Below, one piece after another: positions 15,927 through 56,800 of a stretch of 64,000 nt of DNA; position 1 is the first letter of the stretch; every line of letters begins with the position of its first letter. The notes below the pieces were generated by a model. That model did not search any database, was not told the origin of the DNA, and saw nothing but the letters and a program-made list of their open reading frames with translations. The position numbers were made by a program, and so were the translations under genes. The stretch is from Mobula birostris (Eukaryota), in NCBI RefSeq assembly GCF_030028105.1, contig NC_092383.1:87749921-87813920 (forward strand). The letters run 5' to 3'.

Positions 15927-16225
15927 GTAAATCATTATATTTACAATATGTGCTGTTTAGAATTATTTATAAGTGTTCAGCAGTACTCTTATCAATGACA
16001 CTGGCAAATTCAGGAAGTTCTGCTAATGTTGGAACATGCACAGGGTGATGGAGATGAAGAGGAACCATTGAGAATAATGGCAGTTGCTGTCATGAATTCC
16101 ACGGGACTCTGTTCAAGAGTTGCAATAGGTGCACAGCAAGATCCCAGAGATACCCTGGACTGTTTGCCATAAGGGTGGTGGGATACAGCAACCACTACAA
16201 ACCACAAGGGTCCCAACACCCTTAT

Positions 16226-17639: not shown

Positions 17640-17953
17640 GCTCAACTGCATTAACTGGACCTGAGAAGGTCAGAGGAGTAGTGGGACAATCAATCACCGT
17701 GGAATGCCAGTATGATCAGGAATACAAGGATTACGTGAAAAAATGGTGTACAGGTGATCCTTACGTTGGTTGTTCTGATGTGGTTTCAACTGAAGAGGAC
17801 GAATAACAATGACTGATAACAAGGTACAAGGCATTCTTTCAGTAACTGTGGACAATCTAATGAAGAGTGATGAAGGGTTGTACCAGTGCATGATAGAAAG
17901 GGCAATGTTGATTCCGAACAAAAGGTTTACCATTTCCCTGGAGATTTCTGAAG
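17640..17953 (+). pseudogene. Gene A V-type Ig exon (VA) with a 10-nt frameshift deletion
   Basis: Acceptor CCTGCAG|, donor GAAG|GTATGT. Reads [50 protein letters not shown], then shifts frame; resumes [50 protein letters not shown]. Lacks the 10 nt (CCAGCCAYGA) present in V1-V3. Confidence 0.92.
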
Positions 17954-18539: not shown

Positions 18540-20513
18540 CAGAAGAAAAGAAGAGCTTACGAAAGGTTCAAAAAACTAGGTAATGATAGAGATCTAGAAG
18601 AATATAAGGCTAGCAGGAAGGACCATAAGAATGAAATTAGGAGAGCCCGAAAGGGCCATGAGAAGGCCTTGGCAGACAGGATTAAGGAAAACCCCCAAGG
18701 GATTCTACAAGTATGTGAAGAGCAAGAGGATAAGACGTGAGAGAATAGGACCAATCAAGTGTGACAGTGGAAAATGTGTATGGAACTGGAGGAGATCCGA
18801 GAGGTACTTAATGAATACTTCACTTCAGTATTCACTATAGATAAGGATCTTGGCGATTGTAAGGAGGATTTGCAGCGGACTGAAAAGCTTAAGCATGTAG
18901 ATATTAAGGAAGAGGATGTGCTGGAGCTTTTGGAAAGCATCAAGTTAGATAAGTCACAGGGACTGGATGGGATGTCAACCAGGCTACTGTGGGAAGTGAG
19001 GGAGGAGATTGCTAGCATCTGCCGATGATCTTTGCATCATCAATGGGGACAGGAGAGGTTCCAGAGCATTGGAGGGTTGCGGATGTTGTTCCCTTATTCA
19101 AGAAAGGGAGTAGGGATAGCCCAGCGAATTAAAGACCAGTGAGTCTTACTTCAGTGGTTGGTAAGTTGATGGAGAAGATCCTAAGAGGCAGGATTTATGA
19201 ACATTTGGAGAGTCATAATATGATTTGGAATAGTCAGCATGGCTTTGTCAAAGGCAGGTCTGCTTTACAAGCCTGATTGAATTTTTTGAGGATGTGACTA
19301 AGCTCATTGATGAAGGTAGAGCCATAGATATAGTGTATATGGATTTTAGCAAGGCATTTGATAAGGTACCCCATTGCAAGGCTTATTGAGAAGGTAAGGA
19401 GGCATGGGATCCAAGGGGACATTGCTTTGTGGATCCAGAACTGGCTTGCCCACAGAAGGCGAAGAGTGGTTGTAGACAGGTCATATTCTGCATGGAGGCC
19501 GGTGACCAGTGGTGTGCCTCAGGCATCTGTTCTGGGACCCCGACTCTTTGTGATTTTTATAAATGACCTGGATGAGGAAGTGGAGGAATGGGTTAGTAAA
19601 TTTGATGATAACACAAAGGTTGGGGGTGTTGTTGATAGTGTGGAAGGCTATCAGAGGTTACAGCGGGACATTGGGAGGATTCAAAACTGGGCTGAGAAGT
19701 GGCAGATGGAGTTCAACCCAGATAAGTGTGAGGTGGTTCATTTTGGTAGGTCAAATATGATGGCAGAATATAGTATTAATGGTAAGACTCTTGGCAGTGT
19801 GGAGAATCAGAGGGACCTTGGGGTCCGAGTCCATAGGACACTAAAAGCTGCTATGGAGGTTGACTCTGTGATTAAGAAGGTATACGGTGCATTGGCCTTC
19901 ATCAATTGTGAGATTGCGTTTCAGAGCCGAGAGGTAACTTGCAGCTATGTAGGATCCTGGTCAGACCCCACTTGGAGTACTGTGCTCAATTCTGGTCGCC
20001 TTAGTGTAAGAAGGACGTGGAAACCATAGAAAGGGTGCAGAGGAGACCTACAAGGATGTTGCCTGGATTGGGGAGCATGCGTTATGAAAATAGGTTGAGT
20101 GAACTTGGCCTTTTCTCCTTGGAGTGATGGAGGATAAGACGTGACCTGATAGAGGTGTACAAGATAATGAGAGGCATTGATCCTGTGGATAATCGGAGGC
20201 TTTTTCCCAGGGCTGAAATGGCTAGCACGAGAGGGCATAGTTTTAAGGTGCTTGGAAGTAGGTACAGAGGAGATGTCAGGGGCAAGTTTTTTTAAAAAAC
20301 ACAGAGAGTGCTGAGTGCAAGGAATGAACTGCCGGTGGCGGTGTGGAGGCGGAGACGATAGGGTCTTTTAAGAGACTCCTGGTTAGGCACATGGAGCTTA
20401 GAAAAATAGAGGGCTATGGGTAAGCCTAGGTAGTTCTAAGGTAAGGACATGTTCAGCACAGCTTTGTGGGCTGAAGGGCCTATATTGTGCTGAGGGTTTT
20501 CTATGTTTCTATG
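18540..20513 (+). mobile_element. CR1 5'-truncated ORF2 inserted into the gene A V cassette intron
   Basis: RT motifs ([28 protein letters not shown]). Cassette sequence resumes at 20514 (..ATGCAGAGAAGAGGAAGGGTG), as in V1 44130 onward. Confidence 0.93.
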
Positions 20514-36819: not shown

Positions 36820-39800
36820 TCAGCAGAATATGTAGTCGGAAGCAGGTCGTTGGGTGACAGTCAGAGGGGGGAAAGCGAAGGTGAGCAGACAGGTAGTGCA
36901 GAACACCCCTGTAGCCATTCCCCTGAATAATAAGTTTACCGTCCTGGATACTGTTGGCGGGGACGACCGACCAGGTATGAGCCACGGTGGCAGGGCCTCC
37001 GGCACTGAGTCTGACCCTGTGGTGCAGAAGGGTGGGACGGAGAAGAGGAGAGCTGTCGTCATTGGAGACTCTACAGTCAGGGGAGCAGACAGGAGATTTT
37101 GGGGACGTGAGAAAGACACCCGCATGGTTTGTTGCCTCCCGGGTGCCAGAGTCTGGGATGTCTCTGACCAGGTGCACGACATCCTGGTACGAGAGGGAAA
37201 GCAACCAGAAGTCGTGATACATGTTGGGACCAACGACATAGGCAGGAAGAGGGATGAGGTCCTGAAGTGTGAGTTTCGGGAATTAGGCAGAAGGCTGAAG
37301 AACAAGACCTCAAATGTGACGTTCTCAGGATTGCTGCCAGTGCTACGTGACAGAGATGGTAAGAATTGGAGGAGATGGCAGTTGAATGCGTGGCTGAGGA
37401 GTTGGTGCAGGGAGCAGGGTTTTAGATTTTTAGATCATTGGGATCTCTTCTGGGGAAGGTGGGACCTGTACAGATTGGATGGGTTGCACCTGAAATCGAG
37501 GCAGAGCAATATCCTTGCAGGTAGGTTTGCTAGCATGGTTCAGGAGGGTTTAAACTAATTTGTGAGGGGGATGGGACCCAGAGCGATAGAGCAGTGAAAG
37601 AAGTGCATGGAGTAAAGCCAGATCTAACATACAGAGAGGCTTTGAGGAAAGAGAAGCAGAATAAATGGTGTAAAGACAGTAAGGTAGAAGGGCTGAAATG
37701 TGTGTACCTCAATGCAAGAAGCATCAGGAACAAAGGTGATGAACTGAGAGCTTGGATACATACATGGAATTATGATGTAGTGGCCATTACAGAGACTTGG
37801 CTGGCACCAGGGCAGGAATGGATTCTCAATATTCCTGGATTTCAGTGCTTTAAAAGGGATAGAGAGGGTGGAAAAAGGGGAGGAGGGGTGGCATTACTGG
37901 TCAGGGATACTATTACAGCTACAGAAAGGGTGGGTAATGTAGCAGGATCCTCTTTTGAGTCAATATGGGTGGAAGTCAGGAACAGGAAGGGAGCAGTTAC
38001 TCTACTGGGGGTATTCTATAGGCCCCCTGGTAGCAGCAGAGATAGAGGAGCAGACTGGGAGGCAGATTTTGGAAAGCTGCAAAAATAACAGGGTTGTTAT
38101 CATGGGTGACTAACTTCCCTAATATTGATTGGCACCTGATTAGTTCCAAGGGTTTAGATGGGGCAGAGTTTGTTAAGTGTGTCCAGGACGGATTCCTGTC
38201 ACAGTATGTGGACAGGCCGACCAGGGGGAATGCCATACTAGATCTAGTACTAGGTAATGAACCGGGTCAGGTCACAGATCTCTCAGTGGATGAGCATCTG
38301 GGGGACAATGACCACCGCTCCCTGGCCTTTATAATTATCATGGAAAAGGATAGAATCAAAGAGGACAGGAAAATTTTTAATTGGGGAAAGGCAAATTATG
38401 AGGCTATAAGGCTAGAATTTGCGGGTGTGAATTGGGATGATGTTTTTGCAGGGAAATGTACATGGCCATGTGGTCGATGTTTAGAGATCTCTTGCGGGAT
38501 GTAAGGGATAAATTTGTCCCGATGAGGAAGATAAAGAATGGTAGGGTGAAGGAACCATGGGTGACAAGTGAGGTGGAAAATCTAGTCAGGAGGAAGAAGG
38601 CAGCATACATGAGGTTTAGGAAGCAAGGATCAGCTGGGTCTATTGAGGAATATAGGGAAGCAAGAAAGGAGCTTAAGAAGGGGCTGAGAAGAGCAAGAAG
38701 GGGGCATGAGAAGGCCTTGGCGAGTAGGGTAAATGAAAACCCCAAGGCATTCTTCAATTATGTGAAGAAAAAAGGATGACAGGTGTGAAGGTAGGACCGA
38801 TTAGAGATAAAGGTGGGAAGATGTGCCTGGAGGCTGTGGAAGTGAGCGAGGTCCTCAATGAATACTTCTCTTCGGTATTCACCAATGAGAGGGAATTTGA
38901 TGATGGTGAGGACAATATGAGTGAGGTTGATGTTCTGGAGCATGCTGATATTAAGGGAGAGGAGGTGTTGGAGTTGTTAAAATACATTAGGACAGATAAG
39001 TCCCCGGGGTCTGACAGAATATTCCCCAGGCTGCTCCATGGGACGAGAGAAGAGATTGCTGAACCTCTGGCTAGGATCTTTATGTCCTCGTTGTCCACGG
39101 GAATGGTACCGGAGGATTGGAGGGAGGCGAATGTTGTTCCCTTGTTCAAAAAAGGTAGTAGGGATAGTCCGGGTAATTATAGACCAATGAGCCTTACGTC
39201 TGTGGTGGGAAAGCTGTTGGAAAAGGTTCTTAGAGATAGGATCTATAGGCATTCAGAGAATCATGGTCTAATCAGGGACAGTCAGCATGGCTTTGTGAAG
39301 GGCAGATCGTGTCTAACAAGCCTGATAGAGTTCTTTGAAGAGGTTACCAGGCATATAGATGAGGGTAGTGCAGTGGATGTGATCTATCCATTTGATAAAT
39401 AGTAAGGCATTTGACAAGGTTCCACACGGTAGGCTTATTCAGAAAGTTAGAAGGCATGGGATCCAGGGAAGTTTGGCCAGGTGGATTCAGAATTGGCTTC
39501 CCTGCAGAAGGCAGAGGGTGGTGGTGGAGGGAGTACATTCAGATTGGAGGATTGTGACTAGTGGTGTCCCACAAGGATCTGTTATGGGACCTCTACTTTT
39601 CGTGATTTTTATTAACGACCTGGATGTGGGGGTAGAAGGGTGGGTTGGCAAGTTTGCAGACGACACAAAGGTTGGTGGTGTTGTAGATAGTATAGAGGAT
39701 TGTCAAAGATTGCAGAGAGACATTGATAGGATGTAGAAGTGGGTTGAGAAGTGGCAGATGGAATTCAACCCGGAGAAGTGTGAGGTGGTACACTTTGGAA

Positions 39801-40548
39801 GGACAAACTCCAAGGCAGAGTACAAAGTAAATGGCAGGATACTTGGTAGTGTGGAGGAGCAGAGGGATCTCAGGGTACATGTCCACAGATCCCTGAAAGT
39901 TGCTTCACAGGTGGATAGGGTAGTTAAGAAAGCTTATGGGGTGTTAGCTTTCATAAGTTGAGAGATAGAGTTTAAGAGTCGCGATGTAATGATGCAGCTC
40001 TATAAAACTCTGGTTAGGCCACACTTGGAGTATTGTGTCCAGTTCTGGTCACCTCACTATAGGAAAGATGTGGAAGCATTGGAAAGGGTACAGAGGAGAT
40101 TTACCAGGATGCTGCCTGGTTTAGAAAGTATGCATTATGATCAGAGATTAAGGGAGCTAGGGCTTTACTCTTTGGAGAGGAGGATGAGAGGAGATATGAT
40201 AGAGGTATACAAGATAATAAGAGGAATAGATAGAGTGGATAGCCAGCGCCTCTTTCCCAGGGCACCACTGCTCAATACTAGAGAACATGGCTTTAAGGTA
40301 AGGGGTGGGAAGTTCAAGGGGGATATTAGAGGAAGGTTTTTTTACTCAGAGACTGGTTGGTGCGTGGAATGCACTGCCTGAGTCAGTGGTGGAGGCAGAT
40401 ACACTAGTGAAGTGTAAGAGACTACTAGACAGGTATATGGAGGAATCTAAGGTGGGGGCTTATATGGGAGGCAGGGTTTGAGGGTCGGCACAACATTGTG
40501 GGCCAAAGGGCCTGTACTGTGCTGTACTATTCTATGTTCTATGTTCTA
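36820..40548 (+). mobile_element. CR1 with open ORF1 esterase domain (36854-37558) and broken ORF2
   Basis: GDSTVRG, HVGTND and DGLH SGNH motifs in a 234-aa ORF; APE and RT motifs in fragments; (TTCTATG)n tail. Interrupts sequence homologous to the gene A upstream region. Confidence 0.95.
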
Positions 40549-41731
40549 CAATCATCTGTGAAAGTATGTTGGAACTGAGCTGATGTGGAGAAATTTGGTC
40601 AGATAAATCAAAGTCCAGTCACAAGTCACAATGTAGTTATGTTTAGACGGTATAGTCTAGGGTACAGGCAGCAGGATTGCATATTATTTCAAGGCTGCAG
40701 GGAATGGGACAATCTCTGTGGGACAGGACTGAATGGAACAGTAAACCGAAGGGAGATCAGAGCCATGATAACAGAATCATTTCCAGATCAGACGTTGAGG
40801 AAGCCTGGAAGAGATGGTGCTGTACATTATGAAAAAGAAACACACTGTAGTCACAGTGGGTCAGCTCTGCAAAAAAGGGAATGTTTAGGACGGTGGATGG
40901 AGAGTCAGTCAAGCGAGAAAACTTCTCCTGGATGACGTTGAGATTCTGCAAAATGAATCCGAATCAGAATGAAAATCAGAATCAGGTTTAATATCACTGA
41001 CCTCTCTCATGAAATTTGTACCTTTTCAGCAGCAGTACAGTACAGTACCTCAAAATAAAAAGTAACTTGTCAAAAGAAAATTAAGTAGTGAAATAAAGCA
41101 AAATAGTGAGGTAGTGTTCACGGGTTGGTTCATTGTCTGTTCAGAAATCTGATGTTGGAGGGGAAGAAAGTGTTTCTAGTGTGTTCAGTGAGGCTCCAGT
41201 AACTACTCCATGATGGTAACAATGGGAAGGGGGCACGTTCTGGGTGATGGGGGTCCGTAATGATGGAAGTCGCCTTTTTGAGGCATCGCCTTTTGAAGAT
41301 GTCATCGATGCAGGGAAGGCGGGTGTAATGACAGTGCTTGCTGAGTTTGCAACGTTCTGCAGCTTTTACCAGTCCTGTGCAATGTCCTCTCCATACCAGT
41401 CAGAGGTGTTGACACCGAGGAACTTGTGAAGCCGCTCTGCCTTTCCACTGCCGTGCCCTGTGAGGACTGGTGCACGTTCTCTCCTCTTTCCTTCCATGAC
41501 GCCTGAATGCTTGAAGCTGAACAAATCCAAGGGAATGGAAAAATATTCTGACACGGTCCTAACTGCTGCATTGTCTGCAATTGATTGGTTGGCGAGTCAC
41601 CGAAGGTTGCTAGCACAACAGCATATACGTCATGGCAAAAGCAGAATTGATCCCCTCTTGTGCTTATTAAATAAAGAACTGGAAAACTCAAAAATAACAC
41701 AGAGACCCAACTGATCTAAGGCAACTGAAGT

Positions 41732-41828
41732 ATGGAGCTGGTGCTGGGTGAATTCACACTCGAGAGACACCCCAGGACAATGGGAGCTATCGCTCTGTTG
41801 GTTCTCATCTCCACTGGTTTTGTATCAG
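41732..41828 (+). CDS. Gene B exon 1, leader [32 protein letters not shown](G)
   Basis: Two in-frame ATGs (41732, 41780); the second starts a classical signal peptide. Phase-1 donor CAG|GTAAAG. Confidence 0.88.
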
Positions 41829-44800
41829 GTAAAGCATTATATCTAAAATATATGAAGTTTATAGATATTAACAAGTATTGTACAGTTTTCTAATGAATAA
41901 CACTGACAGATGCAGGAAGTTCTGCTGATGTCGGATCATGCACTGGGTGGTAGAGCTGAAGATGAACCGTTGAGAATAATGCCATTTGCTGTCGTGAATT
42001 ATCCAGGATTCTGGTCAAGAGGTGCAATGGGTGCACAGCAAGATGATCTCAGAAATAGCCTGGACTCTCTGCCATGTGGGCAGTAGTTTCAACACAGACA
42101 GAGCAACAACTACAATATCTCCACTGTTGGACCAATATTTCTGCATTCAGCGATCCTCCCAATGTAGATCGACAGAATTTTATTGGGGAATATGTCAGGG
42201 ATAAATCATCCATGGAAACTGTCCCTCTGTAAAATTTCCAGCTTGGATATTCAATTACAGGAGAGGAAACAGCTCCAATTACAAATGGGCTAACTTGAAG
42301 TAGCAGCTGGGGACAGCGGAATAATGAGGAACCTCAGCAAACTGTTTTGTCCTTTAATTGTGATGGTCTAGATAAATAAATAATATGCAGCCATTAAGTT
42401 GTGAGTAACCACATGGACACCAGTTATGTCTGTCTTTTCATTAGTCACGTGGAACAGTCCATGTTCCAGCCCTCCCTCATCCCCTTTCTTCTATTCTCCA
42501 CTCTGGCCTGTTATCTCTTCTTCTCACCTGCCTATCACCATCTCCTCGTGTTCCTCCTTCTTCCCTTTCTCCTGTGATCCACTGTCTTCTTCTATCAGAT
42601 TCCTCCTTCTCCAGTTCTTCAGCTTTCCCACATACCTGGCTTCACCTATCACCTTCTAGTTTATCTTCTTCCCCTCCCCCCATCATTTTATTCTGTTGTC
42701 TTCCCCCTTCATTTCCAGTCCTGACGAAGGGTCTTGACCTGAAACGTTGACTCTGTTCATTTCCATAGACACTGACTGACCTGTCAAGTTGTATGTGTTA
42801 ACCCCTACTTATTTCCTGCTATCACCAATGAGGCCAACTGGGGCCCCAGAAACTTTATAACAATGTGATCATCAGTGGCATGGCCAGAATTTGTTGCAAT
42901 CCCTAGTTGCCCCTAGGAAGGTGATCACTCCCTCACTGAACCACTGCAGCAATCATTTCCACAGAATTCACAACACATTCAAAATGAGAAACAGACACAG
43001 GGTTCAGAATCATTAGGGTGAGCCATTCTGCTTTAACTAAACGTTGAGGAACAATCTCAATGAAATGAGGATTAACATCAAAGATAAACTATTAAAGTGG
43101 GACATGATCTCTTCAAAATCAGGAAACTCTTTGAACAGTATGCATGATTGGCTTACATTGCTCGGTATACTTTGTGCTGACGATGTGTGGGTAATCCTTC
43201 ATTATTAATGTACCCACAGGCTCTGGTGCACTAACTGGAACTGAGAAGATTAGAGGAGTAGTGGGGCAATCGGTCACTGTGGAATGTCGGTATGATCAGA
43301 TATACAAGGACTACATGAAAAAGTGGTGTAGAGGTGATCTTTCCATTGGTTGTTCCACAGTGGTTTCAACTGACCAGCCACGAACAGGACGAATATTGAT
43401 GGCTGATAACAAAACACAAAGGATTCTTTCAGTAACTGTGAACAATCTAAAGAAGAGTGATGAAGGGCTGTACCAGTGTGTAATGGAGAGGTTAATATAT
43501 GTACCGAATAAAAGGTTTACCATTTCACTGGAGGTTTCTGAAGGTACATTAACAATTTCTCTTTTGTTCCAAAATTTGAAAATCCCAAATTCACTGCCTC
43601 ACACTGTTCATGACTCAGTGCCTCATCCCAGGGAATCAAAGGATTGGAGCCTTATTTAGTGAGGATCCCAGCCTATTGGGACACACTAAGAGCCCCAACC
43701 TCCTGGGAAGGTATGAATAGACTGTCAAACACTAAACCGATGGGAAGGTCCCAATGGCCAACTGTTCTGCTGTTGATGGGTCACTTCCCTGAAGACAGTT
43801 GCTTCAATATCAGACACTGTACTGACTCTCACTGGAACAGAAGAGGAAGAGCGAGCTACACATCTGTTCCCCTATCCATCAAAGCTCACCATCACCACTC
43901 ACACATTGTTCTGATTGCATTGCTTCAACTCTATCCAGCTCTGCCAATTCTAGCAATAAATTCCCAGATGGGAAGGGTGATCTGGTCTTTGGACTGAGCC
44001 ACACAGAAAATACAAAATAAAGTGAATAATGGGGGAAATACTCAGCAGGTCAGGCAGCATCTCTGAGCAGAAAACAATCTTAATGTTCTAGATCAATCTG
44101 AACTGCCTATACTTAGAGGAAATGCAAGAGTTACAATGCAGAGAAGGAGAAGGGTGGAGTGGTTGGAGAGAAAACCAAGAGCTGAAATTACCAACAGAAT
44201 AGAAAAGAAAATCAATAGATGTATGGTCAAACCTAAGAGTAAAAGTACACAATTTGCTGAAAGCAGCGACACAGGCAGACAGGATGGTGAAGTTTGGCAT
44301 ATTGGCCTTCATCAGTCAAGGTATGGAATACAGGAGCTGGGGGCGTTAACTTACAATAGTACAAGGTGTGGTGACACAGCTTATGGTACAATCTGAATAA
44401 AGTGATCAGAAAATTGTCTCTGATACCATCACTAACCTCATCAACTTTGGTAAATCTTATCCACCACCACCAAGCTCGTAGGTCCCTTACCCCAGACTCC
44501 TCACTTCAAACTCCTGTCTAAGATTCACAAACCTGACTGCCCAGGTCAGCCTATTGCCTTTGCCTACTCCTACAATACTGAGCTCATGTCCGCACACCAT
44601 GACTCCATCGTATTCTCTTTGGGTCAGCCTACTGAATCCCATAGCTATCTTGGCTATTCCTCTTCCCATCATATTGACTATCAAAATGCTTTTCCCTTTT
44701 CTTAGTTCCTTTGTCTCTGCCACATCTGTTCCCATGATGAAGCTTTCATTTTGAGAACATCAGATATGTCCTCCTCCTTCAAAGAACAGGCTTTCTCTTT

Positions 44801-47800
44801 CTCCCCCATTGATGCTGCTCCCACCGGAATCACTTTTATTTCCTGGACATCTACGCTCACCCCTTGATTCCAAGATACCATTCTCCCCAATTTCTGCCAT
44901 TTTAACAGGATTCTACCAACAAACACATCATAATCTTATGGTCTTATAATCATCCCTCACTCTCAGCTTCTCCAGTGATGGCTCCCTTTATGATTTCCTT
45001 GTCTGTAAATCCCTTCCCCATTAATCCATCTCCTGGTACATATCTTTGCAAGTGACAAAAATGCTACACCTGTTCATTCACCTCCTCCCGTAACTCCATT
45101 CAGAGCCCCAGACAGTCTTCCAGGTGTAACTTGGAGTGCTGCTTTGTCAAGCACATCCACCAAAAGCTGAATTTCCTAGAAGGCAACCATCTTAGTTCCT
45201 ATCCCCATTTTGACATGTCAGTCCTTGGCTTTCCCTTTTGCCATGATGAGGCCACTCCCAGGATGGAGGAGCAACACCTCATATTCCATCCAGGTAGCCT
45301 CCAACCAAATGGTATGATCATCAATTTCTGTTTGATAATTTTTTTGCCACCTTTCTCCCTCTATTCTCTACTCTGACCTCTTATCTCTTCTCTTCACTTG
45401 CCTATCATCTGCTGCCCCTCTTTCTTCCTTTTATCCCATGGTTTCTTCTACTCTCCTATCAGATTACTTCTTCTCCAGTATTTTAGCTTTCCCACACACT
45501 TGGCTTCATCTATCACCTTCTGGCTTATCTACTTCTCCTCCCCACATCTTTTTATTCTAGTGTCTTCCCCCTTACATGACAGTTCTGAAGTAGGGTTTCA
45601 GGCTGAAATGTTGACTGTTCATTCATTCCCATAGATGCTGCCTGACCTGCTGAGTTCCTCCAGTGTTTTGTATGTTAACCCATCCTCATTTCCCAGTTTC
45701 AATCATTGTTTGTCTATTGACGACATCGATGAGGACCTTGACACCATTATGATGGTGTCGAGACTAGCGCGTGATTTGGATTTAAGTGAGGGAGAGTTGC
45801 TCAGTGTCAGCCTCACTCTCTCTTCCCAATTCCCGTCTGGATCCAGTGGCAAGACAGAGTCGAGATGGCTGGAGATGGGACTAGGCGCAGTGGATGACCA
45901 GGACGTCTTCTGTGTCTTGTCCTGCTCTACACGTTCCATAATGCTTGCAGAGACCGCCTTCTTGACTATTGGACCTTCCATTGGTCTCGTCCACTCAATC
46001 CACCAGAGTCTGTCTTCACATGCTGGGATAGACAACTCCCTATCTCACCGAGGGTTTGATACTTGTTGGCTACCCTCACCTGGTTTAGCCGGCTTGTCGA
46101 AGCCATTGCCCGGGGTGTTGCCGCTGTCGCATGCAAACAGCTATGGAGAGCCACAGGTGAGAGCTGAGTACCAGGTGGGGACCAAAGGTGGACTAACCGT
46201 CCTGAAACGGACACGACATGTTCCCCCACCAGAGGTGCTACCCCTCCCTGACACCCCATACACCCCAGTTTCATCCATAAAGCTTCACTGGAACCCCAGT
46301 AAATTCATTTAAACCTGGGCATCAGTGGGAAGGCCAGAATTTATTGCCATCTCTGGTTGCTCCGGAAGATCATGGCTCCCTCGCTGAACCACTGCAGTTA
46401 TCATTTCAGCAGAATTCACAACCCAAACAAGAAACACCAAATACAAAGCTTAGACATATTAGGGTGAGCGGTTCCGCATTCACTGAACGTTGACAAACAA
46501 TCTCAAAGAAATGAGGATTAACACCAAGGATAAAATATTAAAGTGGAACATGATCTCTGCACAATCATGAAGCTCTCAGAACAGTAGGCTCAAGGGTGGT
46601 GTGAGGAGTAAGTTTCTTTACTCAGAGTTATGGATGCCTGGAATGTGCTGCCTGATATGGTGGTAGAGGAAAATACATCAGAAGCTTTTCAGAGACTTTT
46701 AGATAGGCAGGACAATGCAGAGATATGGACATGTTGTGGGTAGATGGATGAGTGTTTGGGTATTTTAGATTTGGTTTTTAGCTGGCTTGGCACAACACAA
46801 TGGGCCAAATGGCCTTTTCCTCTGCGGTGCTGTTCTATGTTCTATGTTCTAGTAGACATGATGAGTTTATATTGCTAAGTGCACTTTGTGCTGATGATGT
46901 GTGGGTAATCTTTTACTATTCATATACCCACAGGCTCAGGTGCACTAACTGGACCTGAAAAGGTCAGAGGAGCAGTGGGACAATCAGTCACTGTGGAATG
47001 TCGGTATGATCTGAGATACAGGGACTATGTGAAGAAATGGTGTAGAGGTGATCCTTACGTTGGTTGTTCCGCTGTGGTTTCCACTGACCAGCCACGAAGT
47101 GAACGAATAACAATGACCGATTACAAAACACGAGGGATACTTTCAGTAACCATGGACAATCTAAGGAAGAGTGATGAAGGGCTGTACCAGTGTATGATAG
47201 AAAGGACAATGTTGATACCAAATGAAAGGTTTACCATTTCACTCGAGGTGTCTGAAGGTATGTCAATAATTTCTCTTTCATTCCCAAGTTTAAAAATCGT
47301 AGCTTAGGAATTCCCTCCTTGCACTGACCACAATTCAGTGCTTCATCCCTGGGCATCAAAGGACTGAGTCCGCATTTACTGAGGATCTCAGCCTATGGGG
47401 AAACACCAAGAGCCCCAACCTCCTGGAAGGGTGTGAATGGACTGTGAAATCCTGAACCAACGGGACAGTCTTAATGGCCAGTTGTTCTCCTGCGGATGGG
47501 TCACTTCCACAAAGACAGTGGCTCTGAGATCAGACATTAAGCCAGCTCTCACTGGAGCAGGAGGAGAGGAACAAGCTTCACACCTGTCCTCTTGCCTACC
47601 AAGCTCACCCTCACCTCTCGCACATTGCTTCAACTCAGTCCAGCTGCAGCAATAAATTCCCAGATAGGAAGGGTGATCTGGTCTTTGGACTGAGTCACAC
47701 AGAAAGTTCAAAATAAAGTGGATCATGTGGGAAATACTCAGCAGGTCAGGCAGCATCTGTGGAGAGAAAACAACCTTAATGTTTCAGGTCAATCTGAACA

Positions 47801-50800
47801 GCCAATATTTTGAGGAAATGTAGAAGTTACAATTCAGAGAAGCAGACAGATGGGTGGTAAATAGAAGACTAGGCGCTGAAATTACTAATAGAAAAGAAAA
47901 TAAAATCAATAGATGTGCAGACATCTCTTGAAGGTATGTGTACAATTTGTCATCACATTCCCAAGTTTGAAAATCCCATCCTGTGAATTTTCTCCCTTTC
48001 ACTAACCACAACTCATGCCTCATCCCTGGGTATGTACAGCAGGTTAACTAAAATCAATGGCAAGGAGAACAGAGCTAATGATTCAGCTAGATACTCTTTC
48101 AATGGTAATGGAAACATTTGAGGTCAAAAATTTGTTCAGTTGCAGGTAGAGGGAAGACTCCACAAATGGACAGTCCCAAGCCCAGATGCAAAAGGAGAAG
48201 AGTTCAGCATGAGGCTAGCAACCCACAGTAGCATGGTGATTAGCTCAACACTACTTAAGCACGGGGCATTGGAGTTTGGAGTTCAATTCCAGTGTTCTCA
48301 GTAAGAAAGTTTGGACTTTCTTCCTGTGACTTTCCTCCTGATGCTCCGGTTTCCTCCCACAATCCAAAGATGTACCAGTTAGTAAGCTAATTGTAAATTG
48401 TCCTGAGATTAGCCTAGGGTTAAATAGGTGAGTTTCTGGAAGGGCCTACTCTGCACTATATCACTAAATAAATTAAAGTAAGAAAAGAAAAATCTCGTGA
48501 AAACCCAGAGCTACAGAAACACCAACAGAAGCTCCAAAGATCTCATCCATGGGAGAGGAAAGATACACCAAGGAGGGGCGATAGGCCCCAAGAAAATGGC
48601 AGGGGAAGAGTAGCGTGGATGGACAGAAGACAAAGAAAGGTTGTTGATAGGGTAGGGAAAGCAGAGAGTAAAGCTTGTGTGGTAAAGAATTGGTTAAAGA
48701 TTGGGACAGGTACCAAGATCTGAGTCAGGAGGTGGAGTAGAACTGAGAATAAATATCTGAAGTTACCAGCAGGTAAGAAAATAAGCATTAGTGATCACTA
48801 GGAACTGAGTTAGAAAGGCTGGAATTGATGGCAGTCCTAACAATATCTCAGTGAGAATTTTTTTAATACACTGGAAGACTGACTGGTTGCTTTATTTTTA
48901 TCAATTATGAAAGAAAAATCTTCTATATTGCTGTACAAATAATCACCTGCAGATGTCCTTTTCCTGATATCGTGACAAATTACAATCCGCCTCACACCAG
49001 CAGCTGAGGCACAATGCTAGTCACAGGCCTCTAACCCAATAAACAACTATAAACCCTCACGCTTCCCTTCGCACCAGCAAGCCATTTCTGTGTCACAGTC
49101 ATCTTTGCCAAGTTCCTCTTTAATACCACAGAATATGCCATACCCCAATTGATCCTGGTCCAAATTGCTTTGCCATCTATGGAGATGGCAAAGTATATTG
49201 CTTGAGAATTTTCCTGAATACACTTAAATTCTGTCACATCAAAGCCCTAACTAAGGCAGTCCCACTGTTTATAAGGAATCATGATATCCCCTACTATGAA
49301 AGAAAACTAATTTTTTTTTTTTTTTAAATTAAACTTTCCGCAACCACTTTGAAGGTTCCTCTTATACCCATTGATGATTAGCCTTCCTGGAGTAGAATGA
49401 TCAACCCCTTCTTATTTCTCAGGTTCACCCAGAGATCCTCACTGGATGATCCCCCAGTAAACTCATTACAACAGTGACCAGGCCAGAACCTATCTGCCAT
49501 CTCATGTTGCCGCTGAGGAGGTGGTGGCTCCCTCACTGAACCACAGCAGGGATCATTTCTCCAGGATTCACAGCCTGCTCACAACAAGAAACAACAGACA
49601 CGCAAGTTGGGAACGCCTGACCACCCATTATAGCTTTTACTGTAACTTGAGGAACAACTCGGTGAAATGAGGATTAACACCCGGGATAAAATATTCAAGA
49701 GGAACATGATCTCTGCAAAATCATGAGATTCTCTAAGCAGTTAATAAGATGAGTGTATGTTGCTAAATGCACCTTGTGCTGATGACGTGTGGGTAACTTC
49801 CATTATTCATGTGCCAACAGGCTCAGGTGCATTAACTGGACCTGAGAAGGTTAGAGGAGCAGTGGGACAGTCAGTCACTGTGGAATGCCGGTATGATCCG
49901 AAGTACAAGGACTACGTGAAGAAATGGTGTAGAGGTGATCCTCACGTGGGTTGTTCCACTGTGGTTTCGACTGACCAGCCATGAAGAGGACGAGTATCAA
50001 TGACTGACAAAAAAATACGAGGGATTCTTTCGGTAACCGTGGACAATCTAATGAAGAGTGATGAAGGGGTGTATCAGTGTATAATGGAGAGGGTAATATA
50101 CGTACCGAGAAAAAGGTTTATCATTTCACTGGAAGTTTCTGAAGGTACGTTTACAATTTCTCGTCAAGCTTCCATATTAGAAAATCGCAGCTTAGGAATT
50201 CCCTCCCTCAGCTCTGACTATGACTCAGTACCATTAAAGAGATGGGAACTCATTTGCAGGGCTGCAGCCGATAAGGACAAAGAAGAGCTCCACCTTCCTG
50301 GGGGGAGTATGAATGAGCTGATAAACCTGACAGGAAGATCCCAGTGGCCAGCTTTTCAGCTGTTGATAAGACGTTTTCCCCAAAAGACTGCAGTTCTGAG
50401 ATCAAACCTTGTGCTGAGTCTCACTGAAGCAGGAGGAGAGGAACCAGCCCCACCCCTGTTCCCCTGCCCACCAAGCTCACGTTCACCACTCACACACAGT
50501 GGTGATTCCATTGCTTCACCTTGATCCAGTTCTGCCAATTCTACCAATCATTTCCCCCAAGCAAAAATGTCTGTCTGGTCTTTGCACTGAGCCAACACAG
50601 AAGGTACACATCATGGGAAATTCTCAATAGGTCAGTCAGCATCTCTAGATTTAATGGTAGAGGTAGATACCCTATTAGCACCTTCAAATGTCCTTTTCTT
50701 ATTGCCCTTTATTCCTCTTCTATGAACTGATCAACCCCTCCTTTCTCTCAGCCTCTTTCTTTGAGCTACTTCACCCAACCCCCATTTCACCTCCACACTC

Positions 50801-53800
50801 CCCTCTTAGATCTCCAGTTTCCTAGCAGTGGGAGCTGGAGGTCATTAGAGACTTGGATAGCTCAGGGACAGGAATGGTTACTTCAAGTGCTGGGTTTTAG
50901 ATGTTTCAGAAAGGACAGGGAGGGAGGCAAAAGAGGTGTGGGTGTGGCACTGTTGATCAGAGATAGTGTCACGGCTGCAAATAGGTGCAGGCCATGGAGG
51001 GATTGTGTACGGAGTCTCTGTGCGTGGAGGTTAGGAAAAGGAAGGGGTCAATAACTTTACTGGGTGTTTTTTTATAGGCCGCCCAATAGTAACAGGGATA
51101 TCAAGGAGCAGATAGGGAAACAGATCCTGGAAAGGTGTAATAATAACAGTTGTTGCGATGGGAGATTTCAATTTCCCAAATATCCATTGGCACCTTCCTA
51201 GAGCAAGGGGTTTAGATGGGGTGGAGTTTGTTAGGTGTGTTCAGGAAGGTTTCTTGACACAATATGTAGATAAGCCTACAAGAGGAGAGGCTGTACTTGA
51301 TTTGGTATTGGGAAATGAACCTGGTCAGGTGTCAGATCTCTCAGTGGGAGGGCATCTTGGAGATAGTGATCATAATTCTGTCTCCTTTACAGTAGCATTG
51401 GAGAGAGATAGGAACAGACAAATTAGAAAAGCATTTAATTGGAGTAAGGGGAATTATGAGGCTATCAGGCAGGAAATTGGAGGCATAAATTGGAAACAGA
51501 TGTTCTCAGGGAAATATACGGAAGAAATGTGGCAAATACTCAGGGGGTATTTGTGTGGAGTTCTGCATAGGTACATTCCAATGAGACAGGGAGGTTATGG
51601 TAGGGTACAGGAACTGTGGTGTACAAAGGCTGTAATAAATCTAGTCAAGAAGAAAAGAAAAGCTTACAAAAGGTTCAGAGAGCTAGGTAATGTTAGAAAT
51701 CTAGAAGATTATGAGGCTAATAGGAAGAAGCTCAAGAAGGAAATTAGCAGAGCCAGAAGGGGCCATGAGAAGGCCTTGGTGGGCAGGATTAAGGAAAACT
51801 CCACGGCATCCTACAAGTATGTGAAAAGCAAGAGGATAAGACATGAAAAAAATAGGTCCTATCAATTATGACAGAGGGAAAGTGTGTATGGAACAGGAGG
51901 AAATAGCAGAGGAACTTAATGAATACTTTACTTCAGTATTCACTGTGAAAAGGATCTTGATGATTGTAGTGGTGACTTGCAGCAGACTGAAAAGCTTGAG
52001 CATGTAGATATTAAGAAAGAGGATGTGCTGGAGCTTTTGGAAAGCATCAAGTTGGATAAGTCGCTGGGACCGAATGAGATGTACCCCAGGCTACTGTGGG
52101 AGGAGAGGGAGGAGATTGCTGAGCTTCTGGCGATCCTCTTTGCATCATCAATGGGGACAGGAGAGGTTCTGGAGGATTGGAGGGTTGCAGATGTTGTTCC
52201 TTTATTCAAGGAAGGGAGTAGAGATAGCCCAGGAAATTATAGTCCAGTGAGTCTTACCTCAGTGGTTGGTAAGTTGATGGAGAAGATCCTGAGAGGCAGG
52301 ATTTATGAACATTTGGAGAGGTATAATACAATTAGTAGTAGTCATCATGGCTTTGTCAAGGGCAGGTCATGCCTTACGAGTCTAATTGAATTTTTTTAGG
52401 ATGTGACTAAACACATTGATGAAGGAAGAGCAGTAGATGTAGTGTATATGGATTTCAGCAAGGCACTTGATAAGGTACCCCATGCCAGGCTTATTAAGTA
52501 AGGAGGCATGGGATCCAAGGGGACATTGCTTTGTGGATCCAGAACTGGCTTGCCCACAGAAGGCAAAGAATAGTTGTAGATGGATCATATTCTGCATGGA
52601 GGTCAGTCACCAGTGGAGCACCTCAAGGATCTGTTCTAGGACCCTTACTCCTCATGATTTTTATAAATAACCTGGATGAGGAAGTAGAGGGATGGGTTAG
52701 TAAGTCTGCTGATGACACAAAGGTTGGGTGTTGTGGATAGTGTGGAGGGCTGTCAGAGTTTACAGCAGGACATTGATAGGATGCAAAACTGGGCTGAGAA
52801 GTGGCAGATGGAGTTCAACCCAGATAAGTGTGAGGTGGTTCATTTTGGCAAGTCAAATACGATGGCAGAATATAGTATTAATGGTAAGACACTTGGCAGT
52901 GTGGAGGATCAGAGGGATCTTGGGGTCCAAGTCCATAGGGCCCTCAAAGCAGCTGTGCAGGTTGTCTCTGTGGTTAAGAACACGTACGGTGTATTGGCAT
53001 TCATCAATCGTGGAATTGAATTTAGGAGCTGAGAGGTAATATTGCAGCTATATAGGACCCTGGTCAGACCCTACTTGGAGTACTGTGCTCAGTTCTGGTT
53101 GCCTCACTACAGGAAGGATGTGGAAGCCATAGAAAGTGTGCAGAGGAGATTTACAAGGATGTTGCCTGGACTGGGGAGCATGCCTTATCAGAATAGGTTG
53201 AATGAACTTGATCTTTTTTCCTTGGAGCAATGGAGGATGAGAGGTGACCTGATAGAGGTGTATAAGATGATGAGAGGCATAGATCCTGTGGATAGTTAGA
53301 GGCTTTTTCCCAAAGCTGAAATGTCTAGCACGAGAGGACACAGTTTTAAGGTGCTTGGAAGTAGGTACAGAGAAGATGTCAGGGGTTAAGTTTTTTTTCC
53401 CCCTCAGTGGTGAGTGTGTGGAATGGGCCGCCGGCAACTGTGGGGGAGGTAGATACAATAGGGTCTTTTAAGAGACTTTTAGATAGGTACATGGAGCTTA
53501 GTAAAATAGAGGGCTATAGGTAAGTCTAGTAATTTCTAAGGTAGGGACATGTTCGGCACAACCCTGTATTGTGCTGTAGGTTTTCTATGTTTCTATATCA
53601 GGCCTGTTCCCTGTACCAGCAGTGGACAGATCGGGCTCAGAGCCCCTCTACCTTCACCCCTCTCCTCAGTCCAATACAGGAATGCTGTGTCAGTGGCATC
53701 TAGATTGGTGACCAGCTCCAAGACTCCAGCCACAGGGGCAGGGTAATGACAGCAGTGGACATCCTTAGGTGAAGAGGTTAGATGTGGTCCTTGCTGCACC

Positions 53801-56800
53801 AGAGCTTTTCCTGAATTTGGGACACTCTCAGCAACATTCTATGACCAGGGACAAAGAATGGCCAAAGAATCTCCCTGAGAGTGCCCCAAATTCAGGAACC
53901 TCTGGGAGCGTCCCAAAAATCAGGAATATATTGTCACCCTTTTTTCTCTAATAACTGAAGACAACGCAAGCATGGACTCTCACAAGAAATAAACTCTCCA
54001 AATTGAAAGGAATGATTGCCAGGTCTCTTGCACATTGTCCTATCAGCCACAACCCCTTGATTGCCCCACCCTTCCTAGGTCAGACACAGCTGCAAGTCAC
54101 ACAACCGTGCTTCCACTGGCGATGTCTAACCAGACTGAGGCTCATGATAGAAGTTGGGGAATGTTTGAGAGCTCATAGGGCTTAGCCTGTATGAAGATGG
54201 CCTTGTCAGGAGGGAACCACAATGACCATCTGCAGTAAGATTTGAACCAAGGACCTTCAGGCACCGAGCAAGTGACCTAAGTGGGGCACTGCCCACACTT
54301 CATGGAGATGGGATAGAAACTGCTTTCAAACTTTCAATATTCAGATATTTTATCTACTTTACCCTCCAGAAAATGAGACAAGCACCATGGAAACTACTAA
54401 TGCAACCACATGGACCAGCTCATCTCAGAACGGAATTCCCACCAGGTTAGAAGGATCCACTGAGACTTTTGTTTCATTGATTCAGATCAGATCAGCCATT
54501 TCATGGGCCAACTCAGACTTCCACAGCTTTACCTCAATGTTGCAGTACTCTCAGGACAGCTCAAGATGAATATAGACAGCAATTTTTCCAGTGATCGCAG
54601 TGACTTGAAAGGAAAGAGTAGACGGTAGCTCAGGTTGGCTGCTTGTTTGTAGAGCTGTTCGCTGAGCCTGGCGGTTGGGTCACAAACGTTTCAACAGCAG
54701 TCGAGGTGACATCATCAGTGTGCAATTGAGTGCTGTTTCTGCCGAATGCTCGCGTTTGTATTGGTCTGACTCAGTGTTCTGATAGGTAGGCTGTCACACT
54801 GGCTACTAGTTTACATTAGGTCCAAGCGAAACAGATAGCTGAGTGATCACCGCTGGCTTGCTGGCCCATGTCCCTGGTTAGCAGTCACTGATCAGTGGTT
54901 CCTTGGGTGTTCCCTTGCCCCCGATCCCACAGACACACAGGTTCGTAATTTGCATCTAGTCCAATATGCTTGTTAATAGAGTCTTCTGTTGAGAACCAAA
55001 CTTTTAAGAATTCTCTTGTTTTCTTGTTTTGTGCTTCTGCGAGCACTCGGCAGAAACACCCAAATTGCGTATTGATGTTGTCACCTTGACTGGACACGAA
55101 ACCTTTGCGACCTAACCTCCGGGCTTGGTGAACAACCCAACCAAAGATCACAGTGATTTCATGATTAGCATTTTCTTTGCCTTAGTTGCACCTCATTGTA
55201 CACAGCAGAAATTCCCTCTTTTCAACACATTGAGAAGAAAATGCCTGAAGAACAGTCTCTGCAACCTGATCTTCCTCTCCTGGGGCTATCCAGGAATAAT
55301 TCTGGCAGAACACCAACATGGTGGACTTTACTCCAGCAGGATTGTCTGCACACAAAAGGTTCAAGGAAGGGGAAAACAACCCAGTAAATGTACATCAGTA
55401 TTCAACATGAAATCACTCTGATCGCTGGTAAAGCTCAAAGATTCCAAGTACACTTATTATCAAAGAATGTATAGATTATATAGCCTTGGCAGCCACAAAG
55501 CAAGAAACCCAAAAGAATCCAATTTTAAAAAGTAAAGACCAACCTTCAATGCATAGAAAAAGAGAAAAAAAAACAAATCGTGCAAACAAAAGCAGCGAGG
55601 AACAACAGCGGCATTTTGTACCAAGTTGAGTCCTTAGATCCAAATCCCCAGAGTAGGCTCAAAGACTAGGTATCAGCTCATCATGTTACCAGGGCGAATC
55701 GCCGCAAGGTTTGCAAATGCGAAACAGAGCAGCTGGAGCGACCTCACAGCCTCAGCGTCACAGTTGCTGACTATATTTATCTCCGCTATGCACTGTGATG
55801 GGGAAACAAGGTCTAGTGTGCATTAAGTATATAGAAATATATACATAGATATGATAACATTAATTTCACTCAGTTTCACTGGCAGTGCAACAGTTCCAAG
55901 GCGTGGGCATAGGTTGGAGAATCAGCACTCAACCAGTAGACTGCTCGATACTCCATGCATCACGTTGAATGATTTCATGTGCAATGTGAGGACAAGGCGT
56001 TTCCCAACTGTTACAGAATTCTCTGCGCGTTGTTAATTATGTTTCCTTTCTCCATCAGTGTCTGAGTTGAAAATTCACCATGATTTGGCTGTGATCCAGT
56101 TAATATTCTTCAGAGACCTGGCTTTTTGAACCATTTCAATAAAATGTATCTATCATTTGCTGATAACACATATTCGATAAAATGCATTTCTCAGTGGCAC
56201 TTACTGATTACTCTGTGTGTAACTAATGATATTTTCTTGGTTCATCAGGAACTATGTGTCAATAATTCATCATGTTTGGACTCTGACCCGTTGGATACTC
56301 CTCGGAGCTCTGCTTCTTTGCACTGTTTCAATACTTTGCATGACAGCTTTTCAAAGGTATATTGTTTCCAACCCCATCACTTCCACGTCGTATGATTCAC
56401 AATTAAAAGTGGAAGCTTCAAATTAGTCCTTGCTAATTAATTCAGACTGTCACATAAGCGTCTGTAACTGCAAACTAACGATTAGAGTGAAATGAAGGTG
56501 GAGATCCATTAATGGTTAAATGGCTTAAAGTGGCTGAAAGTAACAGTTAAAGGATACACATTAAAACAATATAATAGTTAAGCTAACATACTCCATATGT
56601 TATGCTTAGCTTTTCAGGGCCACAGAGGTTACTAGGCATTTGGAGATGTAAAATGCTCCTCACATGCACCAGGGATCCTGCTCACACAGCTCCACTCATA
56701 CCCAATTTAGCTTCACCACTGGCCAAGTATCTCACGTAGCTCAATAGACTAAGGACAGACGGTAGCATAATGCTTAATTCGACATCTTACAGCACCAGTG

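What the first reader, a model, noticed from the sequence alone, without database searches (positions are those of the whole stretch)
43220..50144. Modular V-exon array: an accordion-like ectodomain built from symmetric phase-1/1 exons
Seen: gene B has three 324-nt V exons, each in a homologous ~1.5-kb cassette, all phase 1/1, so any subset splices in frame (one- or two-domain receptors from one gene). Each V exon begins with the GSGA that completes the signal peptide in V1, so in V2 it becomes a ready-made Gly-Ser interdomain linker ([12 protein letters not shown]). Inference: this is a route from single-domain CD300-like to multi-domain pIgR-like receptors caught in progress.
Basis: partly seen in the sequence, partly recalled or inferred. 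Interest (0 to 1): 0.72.

Follow-up and report, generated by a model that had tools for sequence, protein, structure and literature searches.

The report
Ancient three-V manta ray receptor gene
A manta ray immune-receptor gene really does carry three tandem antibody-like (V) exons, but a stingray has the same three, the third is knocked out by a stop codon, and the RNA available shows only the first in use, so this is an ordinary member of a known modular receptor family and not a domain expansion caught in the act.

Summary
Three 324-nt, AG/GT-bounded, phase-1/1 V-set exons lie at 43220-43543, 46934-47257 and 49821-50144, each in a 1.2-1.65 kb homologous cassette. A single leader exon (41732-41828) serves all three.

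The window is Mobula birostris. RefSeq already models this gene as XP_072133904.1, "pIgR-like": leader-V1-V2-V3, ending at an in-frame TGA in V3 (49982-49984).

"Caught in progress" is refuted. The Hemitrygon akajei orthologue has the same three V domains in the same order. V1/D1, V2/D2 and V3/D3 are 87-89% identical, while V domains within the manta gene are only 74-78% identical. The array therefore predates the Myliobatidae/Dasyatidae split.

Multi-V relatives with the same ...VSE|GS.. junction are common in rays and skates. Narcine isoforms differ by exactly one V exon.

RNA contigs show a clean leader-to-V1 splice and V1 coverage. V2 has zero coverage in four runs, and V3 is essentially unheld.

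Most likely this is an old three-V receptor of the CD300/pIgR-like (MDIR-type) family that in manta now yields mainly a single-V, Arg-TM product, or is decaying. If the accordion moves at all, it contracts.

This scan had already noted multi-V MDIR-type genes elsewhere on the same chromosome. Interest is low to moderate.

The parts
41732..41828 (+). Leader (signal-peptide) exon of gene B. It has an ATG at 41732 and a second in-frame ATG at 41780. The donor is CAG|GTAAAG, phase 1.
   Evidence: It is 100% identical to residues 1-33 of P0002. It was the best signal-peptide-like ORF with a phase-1 donor. A 281-nt RNA contig with no mismatches joins 41734-41825/8 to 43217/20-43405.
42837..44222 (+). 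V1 cassette: the homologous block around V1.
   Evidence: Self-blastn gives 42837-43143 ~ 46287-46589, 43137-44222 ~ 46851-47916 (79%), and 42870-44064 ~ 49469-50646 (74%).
43220..43543 (+). V1 exon: 324 nt, phase 1/1, an intact V-set domain with a Cx7C second cysteine pair.
   Evidence: It is covered by RNA contigs in X1, and its 3' half in X2 and X3. It is 87% identical to D1 of the Hemitrygon orthologue, with tree support 100/99.
46266..47916 (+). V2 cassette. It includes a ~260-nt high-copy repeat insertion at about 46590-46850, which ends 84 nt upstream of the V2 acceptor.
   Evidence: One search shows a break in homology between 46589 and 46851. One search shows elevated repeat-type depth over 46475-46856 in all runs.
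46934..47257 (+). V2 exon: 324 nt, phase 1/1, open reading frame intact.
   Evidence: It is 89% identical to D2 of the Hemitrygon orthologue. Its lineage-specific changes are 6 synonymous and 4 non-synonymous. Contig depth is 0 in all four RNA-type runs.
49420..50646 (+). V3 cassette.
   Evidence: About 54% and 30% of its 31-mers are held by DNA runs of two other organisms, so the cassette is shared with related species.
49821..50144 (+). V3 exon: 324 nt, phase 1/1, otherwise V-like but interrupted by a stop codon.
   Evidence: It is 87% identical to D3 of the Hemitrygon orthologue, which is intact at this codon.
49982..49984 (+). In-frame TGA in V3. V1 and V2 have CGA at this codon, and stingray D3 has Arg.
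   Evidence: RefSeq protein P0002 ends exactly here.
54370..54445 (+). Predicted stalk exon, entered in phase 1 after CCAG and left at CAG|GTTAGA in phase 2. The acceptor and donor used by the paralogues are both altered in gene B.
   Evidence: tblastn with P0003, P0004, P0008 and P0205. Alignment with three paralogous stalk exons. No RNA evidence was obtained.
56249..56356 (+). Predicted transmembrane exon with an Arg in the membrane span (..[14 protein letters not shown]..).
   Evidence: tblastn at 63-73% identity to the TM exons of P0003 and P0004. No RNA evidence was obtained.

Best explanation
Gene B is the manta ray (Mobula birostris) orthologue of a stingray "pIgR-like" gene. It belongs to the batoid cluster of CD300/pIgR-like receptors (MDIR-type).

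Its three V exons form an old, positionally conserved array. The ancestral product was a leader plus three V domains, joined head to tail through the ...VSE|GSGA... junction that phase-1/1 exons create, followed by a stalk and a transmembrane segment.

In the manta, V3 has acquired a CGA-to-TGA nonsense codon. Any mRNA that includes V3 therefore encodes a truncated protein. By the usual 50-nt rule, such an mRNA should also be a target of nonsense-mediated decay.

The transcripts that can be seen splice the leader to V1 and contain neither V2 nor V3. The in-frame path leader-V1-stalk-TM gives a ~200-aa single-V receptor with an Arg in its membrane span. That is the activating type, which signals through an ITAM adaptor.

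Shown here: the exons, their phases, the stop codon, the orthology, the leader-to-V1 splice, and the absence of V2 from RNA contigs.

Inferred: the V1-to-stalk junction, the adaptor pairing, and whether V2 is now permanently skipped or only skipped in the tissues sampled.
For: - Identity: P0002 (XP_072133904.1, M. birostris) maps at 100% to the leader, V1, V2 and V3 up to the stop.
- Orthologue: P0205 (Hemitrygon akajei) has a leader 88% identical. Its D1, D2 and D3 are reciprocal best matches to V1, V2 and V3 at 87, 89 and 87%. V domains within the manta gene are only 74-78% identical. V1+D1 has tree support 100/99 and V3+D3 has 87/71.
- Constraint on the V exons: pairwise dN/dS is 0.25-0.47. 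Exons are 83-86% identical with no indels among V1-V3, while flanks are 68-81% identical with 4-13 indel events per ~450 nt.
- RNA: in X1, a 281-nt contig with no mismatches joins the leader to V1. V1 depth is about 28 and ends near the donor. The V2 bins (46857-47400) read 0 in all four runs. On the V3 stretch, X2 holds 0.02 of the words and X1 is not among the holders.
- In-frame single-V path through the stalk and TM exons.
- Neighbouring genes are single-V with an Arg-TM (first half of P0153).
Against: - V2 is intact and as conserved against its stingray orthologue as V1 (89% against 87%). Its own lineage shows 6 synonymous to 4 non-synonymous changes. That argues it is or recently was translated, so the skipping may be tissue-specific.
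- The RNA evidence is thin: three small manta runs plus one run of a second organism, kept only as contigs, of unknown tissue. Contigs show presence, not absence.
- The V1 donor's partner was not seen, because the one read-laying run covered only 41700-47400.
- RefSeq strings V1-V2-V3 together. The support for that model is unknown to me.
- I could not check the TGA base in reads. It could be a polymorphism or an assembly error.
- The stalk exon's paralogue-type acceptor and donor are both altered, so the membrane-bound single-V product is a prediction.
Confidence: 0.6

Rival explanations
1. A regulated accordion. The gene makes one-V and two-V receptors by alternative inclusion of V2 in different cells or states. 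V3 acts as a poison or secretion-switch exon that lowers output through nonsense-mediated decay.
For: - All exons are phase 1/1, and both the 1-V and 2-V paths read open.
- V2 is intact, conserved and apparently constrained.
- Narcine RefSeq isoforms differ by exactly one V exon, and one isoform ends in a secreted tail.
- A V1-only form is seen in manta RNA contigs, while conservation implies that V2 and V3 have been translated.
Against: - No V2- or V3-containing contig appears in any of the four runs.
- The stop in V3 is a single CpG transition that is absent from the stingray orthologue. It looks like a recent lesion, not a conserved regulatory device.
- The Narcine isoforms are predictions.
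Confidence: 0.2
2. An expressed, decaying gene. After V3 was hit, the locus is drifting to a pseudogene, like its neighbour gene A. The leader-V1 RNA would then be residual transcription with no functional membrane product.
For: - V3 carries a nonsense codon.
- Both paralogue-type splice sites of the stalk exon are altered.
- Gene A next door has a 10-bp frameshifting deletion in its V exon.
- L007, just beyond the window, has two TGA codons.
- On the Mobula side of the tree, branch lengths rise from V1 (0.018) to V2 (0.065) to V3 (0.11).
Against: - V1 is very well conserved on the manta branch (0.018).
- The altered stalk donor is shared in protein read-through with the stingray model (..IR-SAISW..), so it is old and not a fresh lesion.
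- A substitute donor in the same phase keeps the frame into an intact Arg-TM exon.
- The transcript is correctly spliced at leader-V1.
Confidence: 0.15
3. Three separate single-V genes or gene fragments, each V having its own leader.
For: Short ATG-started ORFs with GT donors exist upstream of V2, for example at 46809-46851.
Against: - Leader peptides of the family hit only 41732-41830 and 15830-15928 in the window.
- The ORF upstream of V2 lies inside a high-copy repeat.
- The cassettes start only ~380-650 nt upstream of each V and contain no TM exon.
- V2 has no RNA coverage at all.
- The stingray orthologue is modelled as one gene spanning 14 kb.
Confidence: 0.03

Closest known systems
MDIR (modular domain immune-type receptors) of the clearnose skate, Cannon et al. 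2006, Immunogenetics 58:362
   Same: - A batoid multigene cluster of non-rearranging Ig receptors whose domains resemble CD300, TREM, FCAR and pIgR (PMC3031540).
- A variable number of Ig domains per gene. In the original paper this is one to six, from my memory; the paper was not held.
- Activating forms with a charged TM and inhibitory forms with an ITIM. Both kinds are seen among the relatives found here.
   Different: - No named MDIR sequence came up in my searches, so membership rests on description, taxon and architecture.
- I recall the original paper describing MDIR domains as I- or C2-set. Here Pfam calls them V-set.
CD300 / CMRF35-like molecules (mammals)
   Same: - A single V-type domain with an extra cysteine pair (Cx7C here).
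- phmmer E about 1e-15 to CD300LF/CLM-1 structures.
- A short stalk.
- An activating subtype with a charged TM residue.
- RefSeq names many single-V shark and ray relatives "CMRF35-like molecule".
   Different: - CD300 genes have one V exon, whereas this gene has three in tandem.
- No orthology was shown. Domain identity is only about 30-35%.
Polymeric immunoglobulin receptor (pIgR)
   Same: - Tandem V-type domains of the same subtype, each on a phase-1/1 exon.
- The best solved-structure matches are pIgR chains, with a summed E of 1e-30.
- RefSeq's automatic name for this gene is "pIgR-like".
   Different: - The predicted TM carries an Arg.
- No long sorting or transcytosis tail was found.
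- The gene sits in a cluster of paired activating and inhibitory paralogues.
- Each domain scores only 10-33 bits against pIgR domains.
- Nothing here shows binding of polymeric Ig.
Teleost NILT genes (zebrafish chromosome 1 cluster)
   Same: - Non-rearranging Ig receptors with CxnC domains related to CD300, TREM, NKp44 and pIgR.
- 1, 2, 4 or 6 Ig domains per gene.
- Ig exons with premature stops or without transcripts are treated as pseudogenes (bioRxiv 10.1101/2022.04.21.489081).
   Different: A different lineage. Orthology was not tested.

Membership tests
Immunoglobulin V-set domain (Pfam PF07686) | Profile match above the gathering score | tested here: met
   V1 scores 44.7 bits and V2 scores 54.4 bits, against a cut-off of 26.
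CD300/pIgR/TREM-type V domain | A second, internal cysteine pair (CxnC) besides the canonical pair, and closest solved relatives in this group | tested here: met
   The W-C-x7-C motif and the canonical ..VEC.. and ..YQC.. are present in V1, V2 and V3. The top PDB matches are pIgR, CD300LF, CD300A/C, NKp44 and TREM2.
MDIR (batoid modular domain immune-type receptors) | Encoded in a large tandem multigene cluster in a skate or ray | tested here: met
   There are 19 V-exon matches on the same chromosome, eight of them of this subfamily within about 140 kb. The species is Mobula birostris.
MDIR (batoid modular domain immune-type receptors) | Variable number of tandem Ig domains among family members, with activating (charged TM) and inhibitory (ITIM) forms | tested here: met
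   Relatives carry 1 V (Amblyraja P0157/P0158), 2 V (P0156, P0008), 3 V (Leucoraja P0005/P0155, Hemitrygon P0205) and 4-5 V (Narcine). Both Arg-TM tails and ITIM-type tails occur.
MDIR (batoid modular domain immune-type receptors) | Sequence relationship to the named Raja eglanteria MDIR1-5 proteins | not testable with these tools
   No protein named MDIR appeared among the hits. The original paper is not held.
Bona fide pIgR | An uncharged TM plus a long cytoplasmic tail with sorting and transcytosis signals, and orthology to vertebrate PIGR | tested here: inconclusive
   The predicted TM exon carries an Arg, and the reading frame leaves it after ..AFQ(R). Tail exons were not mapped. The gene's nearest relatives are cluster paralogues, not PIGR. 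The name "pIgR-like" is automatic.
Bona fide pIgR | Binds J-chain-containing polymeric Ig | not testable with these tools
   This needs a binding assay.

The most novel reading that the evidence does not exclude
The accordion works in reverse. Because every V exon is phase 1/1, a three-V receptor hit by a nonsense mutation in V3 has been rescued by skipping V2 and V3. That converts an ancient three-domain receptor into a working single-domain, Arg-TM activating receptor in manta rays. It would be a natural example of symmetric exons buffering a gene against domain-killing mutations and of multi-domain to single-domain conversion. V2 might still be used in some cell types, and V3 might act as a poison exon.
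Probability: 0.2. Interest if true: 0.45.

Novelty: new member of a known kind. Interest (0 to 1): 0.22.

Why it matters
It corrects a tempting evolutionary story. The three-V array is not a fresh step from CD300-like to pIgR-like receptors. It is an old, conserved architecture in stingray-type rays, inside a family long known to vary its domain number.

The locus also gives a small, concrete case for studying how symmetric Ig exons let immune receptors lose (or vary) domains without breaking the reading frame.

Finally, it flags that the RefSeq model for this gene, truncated in V3 and without a TM, probably does not describe the main product.

Tried and rejected
- **Own leader for each V.** I scanned for ATG ORFs ending in a phase-1 GT donor and ran tblastn with family leaders. 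Only 41732-41828 and gene A's 15830-15926 qualify. The candidate upstream of V2 lies in a high-copy repeat.
- **A leader-like motif directly upstream of each V.** This is an ATG followed by ..GTGTGG|GTAAT about 29 nt before the acceptor. I rejected it as a mini-intron. Twenty-nine nucleotides is too short, the V2 copy has an in-frame TAA, and read-through hits a stop (read).
- **Short transcript-derived protein fragments containing V1.** None are in the protein collection.
- **Fetching the DNA.** The public record of this gene was withheld. The stingray orthologue's file was too large. No per-exon dN/dS against the orthologue was therefore possible.
- **Recent in-situ triplication.** Rejected. 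dS is about 0.3 between exons. Flanks are 68-81% identical with many indels. The orthologue has the same positional array.
- **V2 as a gene-conversion product of neighbours L003/L005.** V2 grouped with them at 90/90 in the first tree. It was unresolved once stingray D2 was added, and D2 is V2's best match at 89%.
- **Literature.** Cannon 2006 and a 2010 review are not held.
- **Named MDIR proteins.** None were found among the hits.
- **Sequencing-run searches.** The look-up of sequencing runs was busy twice before it answered.
Full report
**1. What is in the sequence**

- V1 at 43220-43543
- V2 at 46934-47257
- V3 at 49821-50144

Each is 324 nt. Each is preceded by a pyrimidine-rich tract ending in CAG and followed by GTA.... 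Entered in phase 1, each begins G-S-G-A-L-T-G and ends ..SLEVSE with one base left over.

All are V-set domains. Pfam PF07686 gives E 1.7e-11 and 1.6e-14. They carry the extra W-C-x7-C cysteine pair. Their closest solved relatives are pIgR domains, CD300LF/CLM-1, CD300A/C, NKp44 and TREM2.

Self-comparison of the window shows homologous blocks around each exon:
- 42837-44222
- 46266-47916, interrupted by a ~260-nt repeat at 46590-46850
- 49420-50646

The blocks are 72-79% identical. Repeat-rich spacers separate them, and contigs of every run laid on them pile up to depths of 10^3-10^5.

The finding text omits that V3 has an in-frame TGA at 49982-49984, where V1 and V2 have CGA.

**2. One gene with one leader**

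The only family-type leader near these exons is at 41732-41828, with a CAG|GTAAAG phase-1 donor. A second, degenerate copy at 15830-15926 belongs to the neighbouring gene A. Gene A's single V exon (17640-17953) has a 10-bp frameshifting deletion.

Downstream of V3, tblastn with relatives finds a stalk exon and a transmembrane exon.

Compared with three paralogous stalk exons, gene B has lost both the usual acceptor (TTTAG) and the usual donor (CAG|GTTAGT has become CAG|ATCAGC). It has a substitute acceptor at CCAG|AA (exon from 54370). It also has a substitute donor, CAG|GTTAGA (exon to 54445), in the same phase.

With these sites, leader-V1-stalk-TM and leader-V1-V2-stalk-TM both read open into the TM exon at 56249-56356. 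That exon carries an Arg in the membrane span.

**3. Whose gene it is**

A profile-free search with V1 returned a 302-aa protein, P0002, that maps at 100% to the leader, V1, V2 and V3 up to the TGA. It is RefSeq XP_072133904.1, "polymeric immunoglobulin receptor-like [Mobula birostris]".

The public annotation therefore already strings the three V exons together and ends the protein in V3. I do not know what evidence supports that model.

**4. The family**

Relatives in rays and skates carry different numbers of V domains:

| V domains | Proteins |
|---|---|
| 1 | Amblyraja P0157, P0158 |
| 2 | Amblyraja P0156, Hemitrygon P0008 |
| 3 | Leucoraja P0005, P0155 |
| 4-5 | Narcine |

They have either an Arg-containing TM or ITIM-type tails. 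In all of them the domains are joined ...VSE|GS(T/R/G)(A/G)(I/L)TGP. The "ready-made Gly-Ser linker" is thus a family-wide consequence of phase-1/1 V exons.

Narcine RefSeq isoforms X1 (662 aa, five V) and X5 (557 aa) differ by exactly one 105-aa V unit. Isoform X4 ends in a short secreted tail. These are predicted isoforms.

This is the picture described for the skate MDIR family. [quoted passage not shown] From my memory of Cannon et al. 2006, which is not held, they carry one to six domains. Teleost NILTs likewise have 1, 2, 4 or 6 domains.

In the manta genome, this V subfamily has eight exons within about 140 kb.

**5. The array is old**

The decisive result is the stingray orthologue P0205 (Hemitrygon akajei, 535 aa).
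- Its leader is 88% identical to gene B's.
- It has three V domains in the same order.
- V1/D1, V2/D2 and V3/D3 are reciprocal best matches at 87, 89 and 87% amino-acid identity.
- V1, V2 and V3 are only 74-78% identical to one another.
- V1+D1 is supported 100/99 and V3+D3 87/71.

Mobula (Myliobatidae) and Hemitrygon (Dasyatidae) are different families of Myliobatiformes. The triplication therefore predates their split.

Other measures agree:
- dS between the exons is about 0.3, with dN/dS of 0.25-0.47.
- Exons are 83-86% identical without any indel among V1-V3. Their intronic flanks are 68-81% identical with 4-13 indel events per ~450 nt.
- DNA runs of two other organisms hold about 54% and 30% of the V3-cassette 31-mers.

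"Caught in progress" is therefore refuted. All three exons have been kept as coding sequence for a long time. D3 is intact at the codon that is TGA in manta, so the manta stop is a later, lineage-specific CpG transition.

**6. What is transcribed in manta**

Three small runs of organism A and one of organism B, all kept as contigs, were laid on 41700-47400.
- In X1, a 281-nt contig with no mismatches joins 41734-41825/8 to 43217/20-43405. This is the leader-to-V1 splice. The three bases at the joint, CAG, fit either side.
- V1 is covered at a depth of about 28. The next bin's value (19.3 over 191 nt) fits coverage that stops at the V1 donor.
- X2 and X3 cover the 3' half of V1.
- The three bins over V2 (46857-47400) are 0 in all four runs.
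- On a 561-nt stretch around V3, X2 holds 0.02 of the words. X1 is not among the 20 holders, which are listed down to a share of 0.04.

V2 is thus not a constitutive exon in these samples. The V1 donor must join something beyond 47400.

Limits on this evidence:
- Contigs show presence, not absence.
- The tissues are unknown.
- The partner of the V1 donor was not seen.
- A hidden filter for human-like records exists. It is unlikely to separate V2 from V1, which is 84% identical.

**7. Reading**

The best fit is an ancient three-V receptor gene of the batoid CD300/pIgR-like (MDIR-type) family. In manta it has lost V3 to a nonsense codon and now yields, at least mainly, a transcript without V2 and V3. 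The predicted product is a single-V, Arg-TM activating-type receptor like its neighbours (first half of P0153).

On the manta side of the tree, branch lengths rise from V1 (0.018) to V2 (0.065) to V3 (0.11). This fits relaxed constraint on the distal exons, though it rests on few sites.

Against a simple "V2 is dead" view, V2 is intact, is 89% identical to D2, and shows 6 synonymous to 4 non-synonymous lineage-specific changes. Regulated or tissue-specific inclusion of V2 therefore remains possible (about 0.2). So does overall decay of the locus (about 0.15). Separate genes with their own leaders are very unlikely.

**8. Verdict**

- The modular, in-frame design is real but is the norm for this known family.
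- The evolutionary inference is wrong in timing and probably in direction.
- This scan had already reported multi-V MDIR-type genes elsewhere on the same chromosome (notes s1-145214 and s1-145212). I did not re-test those loci.
- Novelty: a new member of a known kind.
- Interest: low to moderate.

Noticed in passing
window 15830-15926 and 17640-17953: Gene A is a paralogue of gene B with a single V cassette between the same kinds of introns, and it is a pseudogene. Its V exon has a 10-bp deletion that shifts the frame. The second Met of its leader is replaced by Thr.
   Followed up: partly
window 54366-54495: Gene B's stalk exon has lost both the acceptor (TTTAG) and the donor (CAG|GT) that three paralogues use. 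Substitute sites in the same phase exist. The stingray orthologue's model reads through the same lost donor (..IR-SAISW..), so the change is old.
   Followed up: partly
window 43140-43219, 46860-46933, 49750-49820: A conserved motif lies just upstream of every V acceptor: ..TTGTGCTGA(C/T)GA(C/T)GTGTGG|GTAA.., about 29 nt before the CAG. The Hemitrygon RefSeq model translates 24 residues of this region in front of D3 ([24 protein letters not shown]). It could be a branch-point or enhancer region, or a relic of an older exon.
   Followed up: no
G000:C18:87818107-87818424 and 87822478-87822735 (L006, L007; 4-9 kb beyond the window's end): Another tandem pair of V exons of the same subfamily. The first is intact. 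The second has two TGA codons and a broken 5' part.
   Followed up: no
G000:C18:87854749 and 87905819 (L005, L003): RefSeq protein P0153 (503 aa, M. birostris) contains two leaders and two nearly identical V domains that lie 51 kb apart. It looks like two neighbouring single-V genes merged into one model.
   Followed up: no
window 16416-16886 and 40078-40544: An inverted pair of repeat copies 95.8% identical. This is far younger than the gene duplications around them (70-85%).
   Followed up: no
window 37791-40442, 18541-20512, 50847-53596: A third copy of the sequence that follows the V cassette in genes A and B lies just upstream of gene B's leader, with no V exon beside it. It is either a transposable element or the remnant of a lost gene.
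   Followed up: no
   Followed up: no
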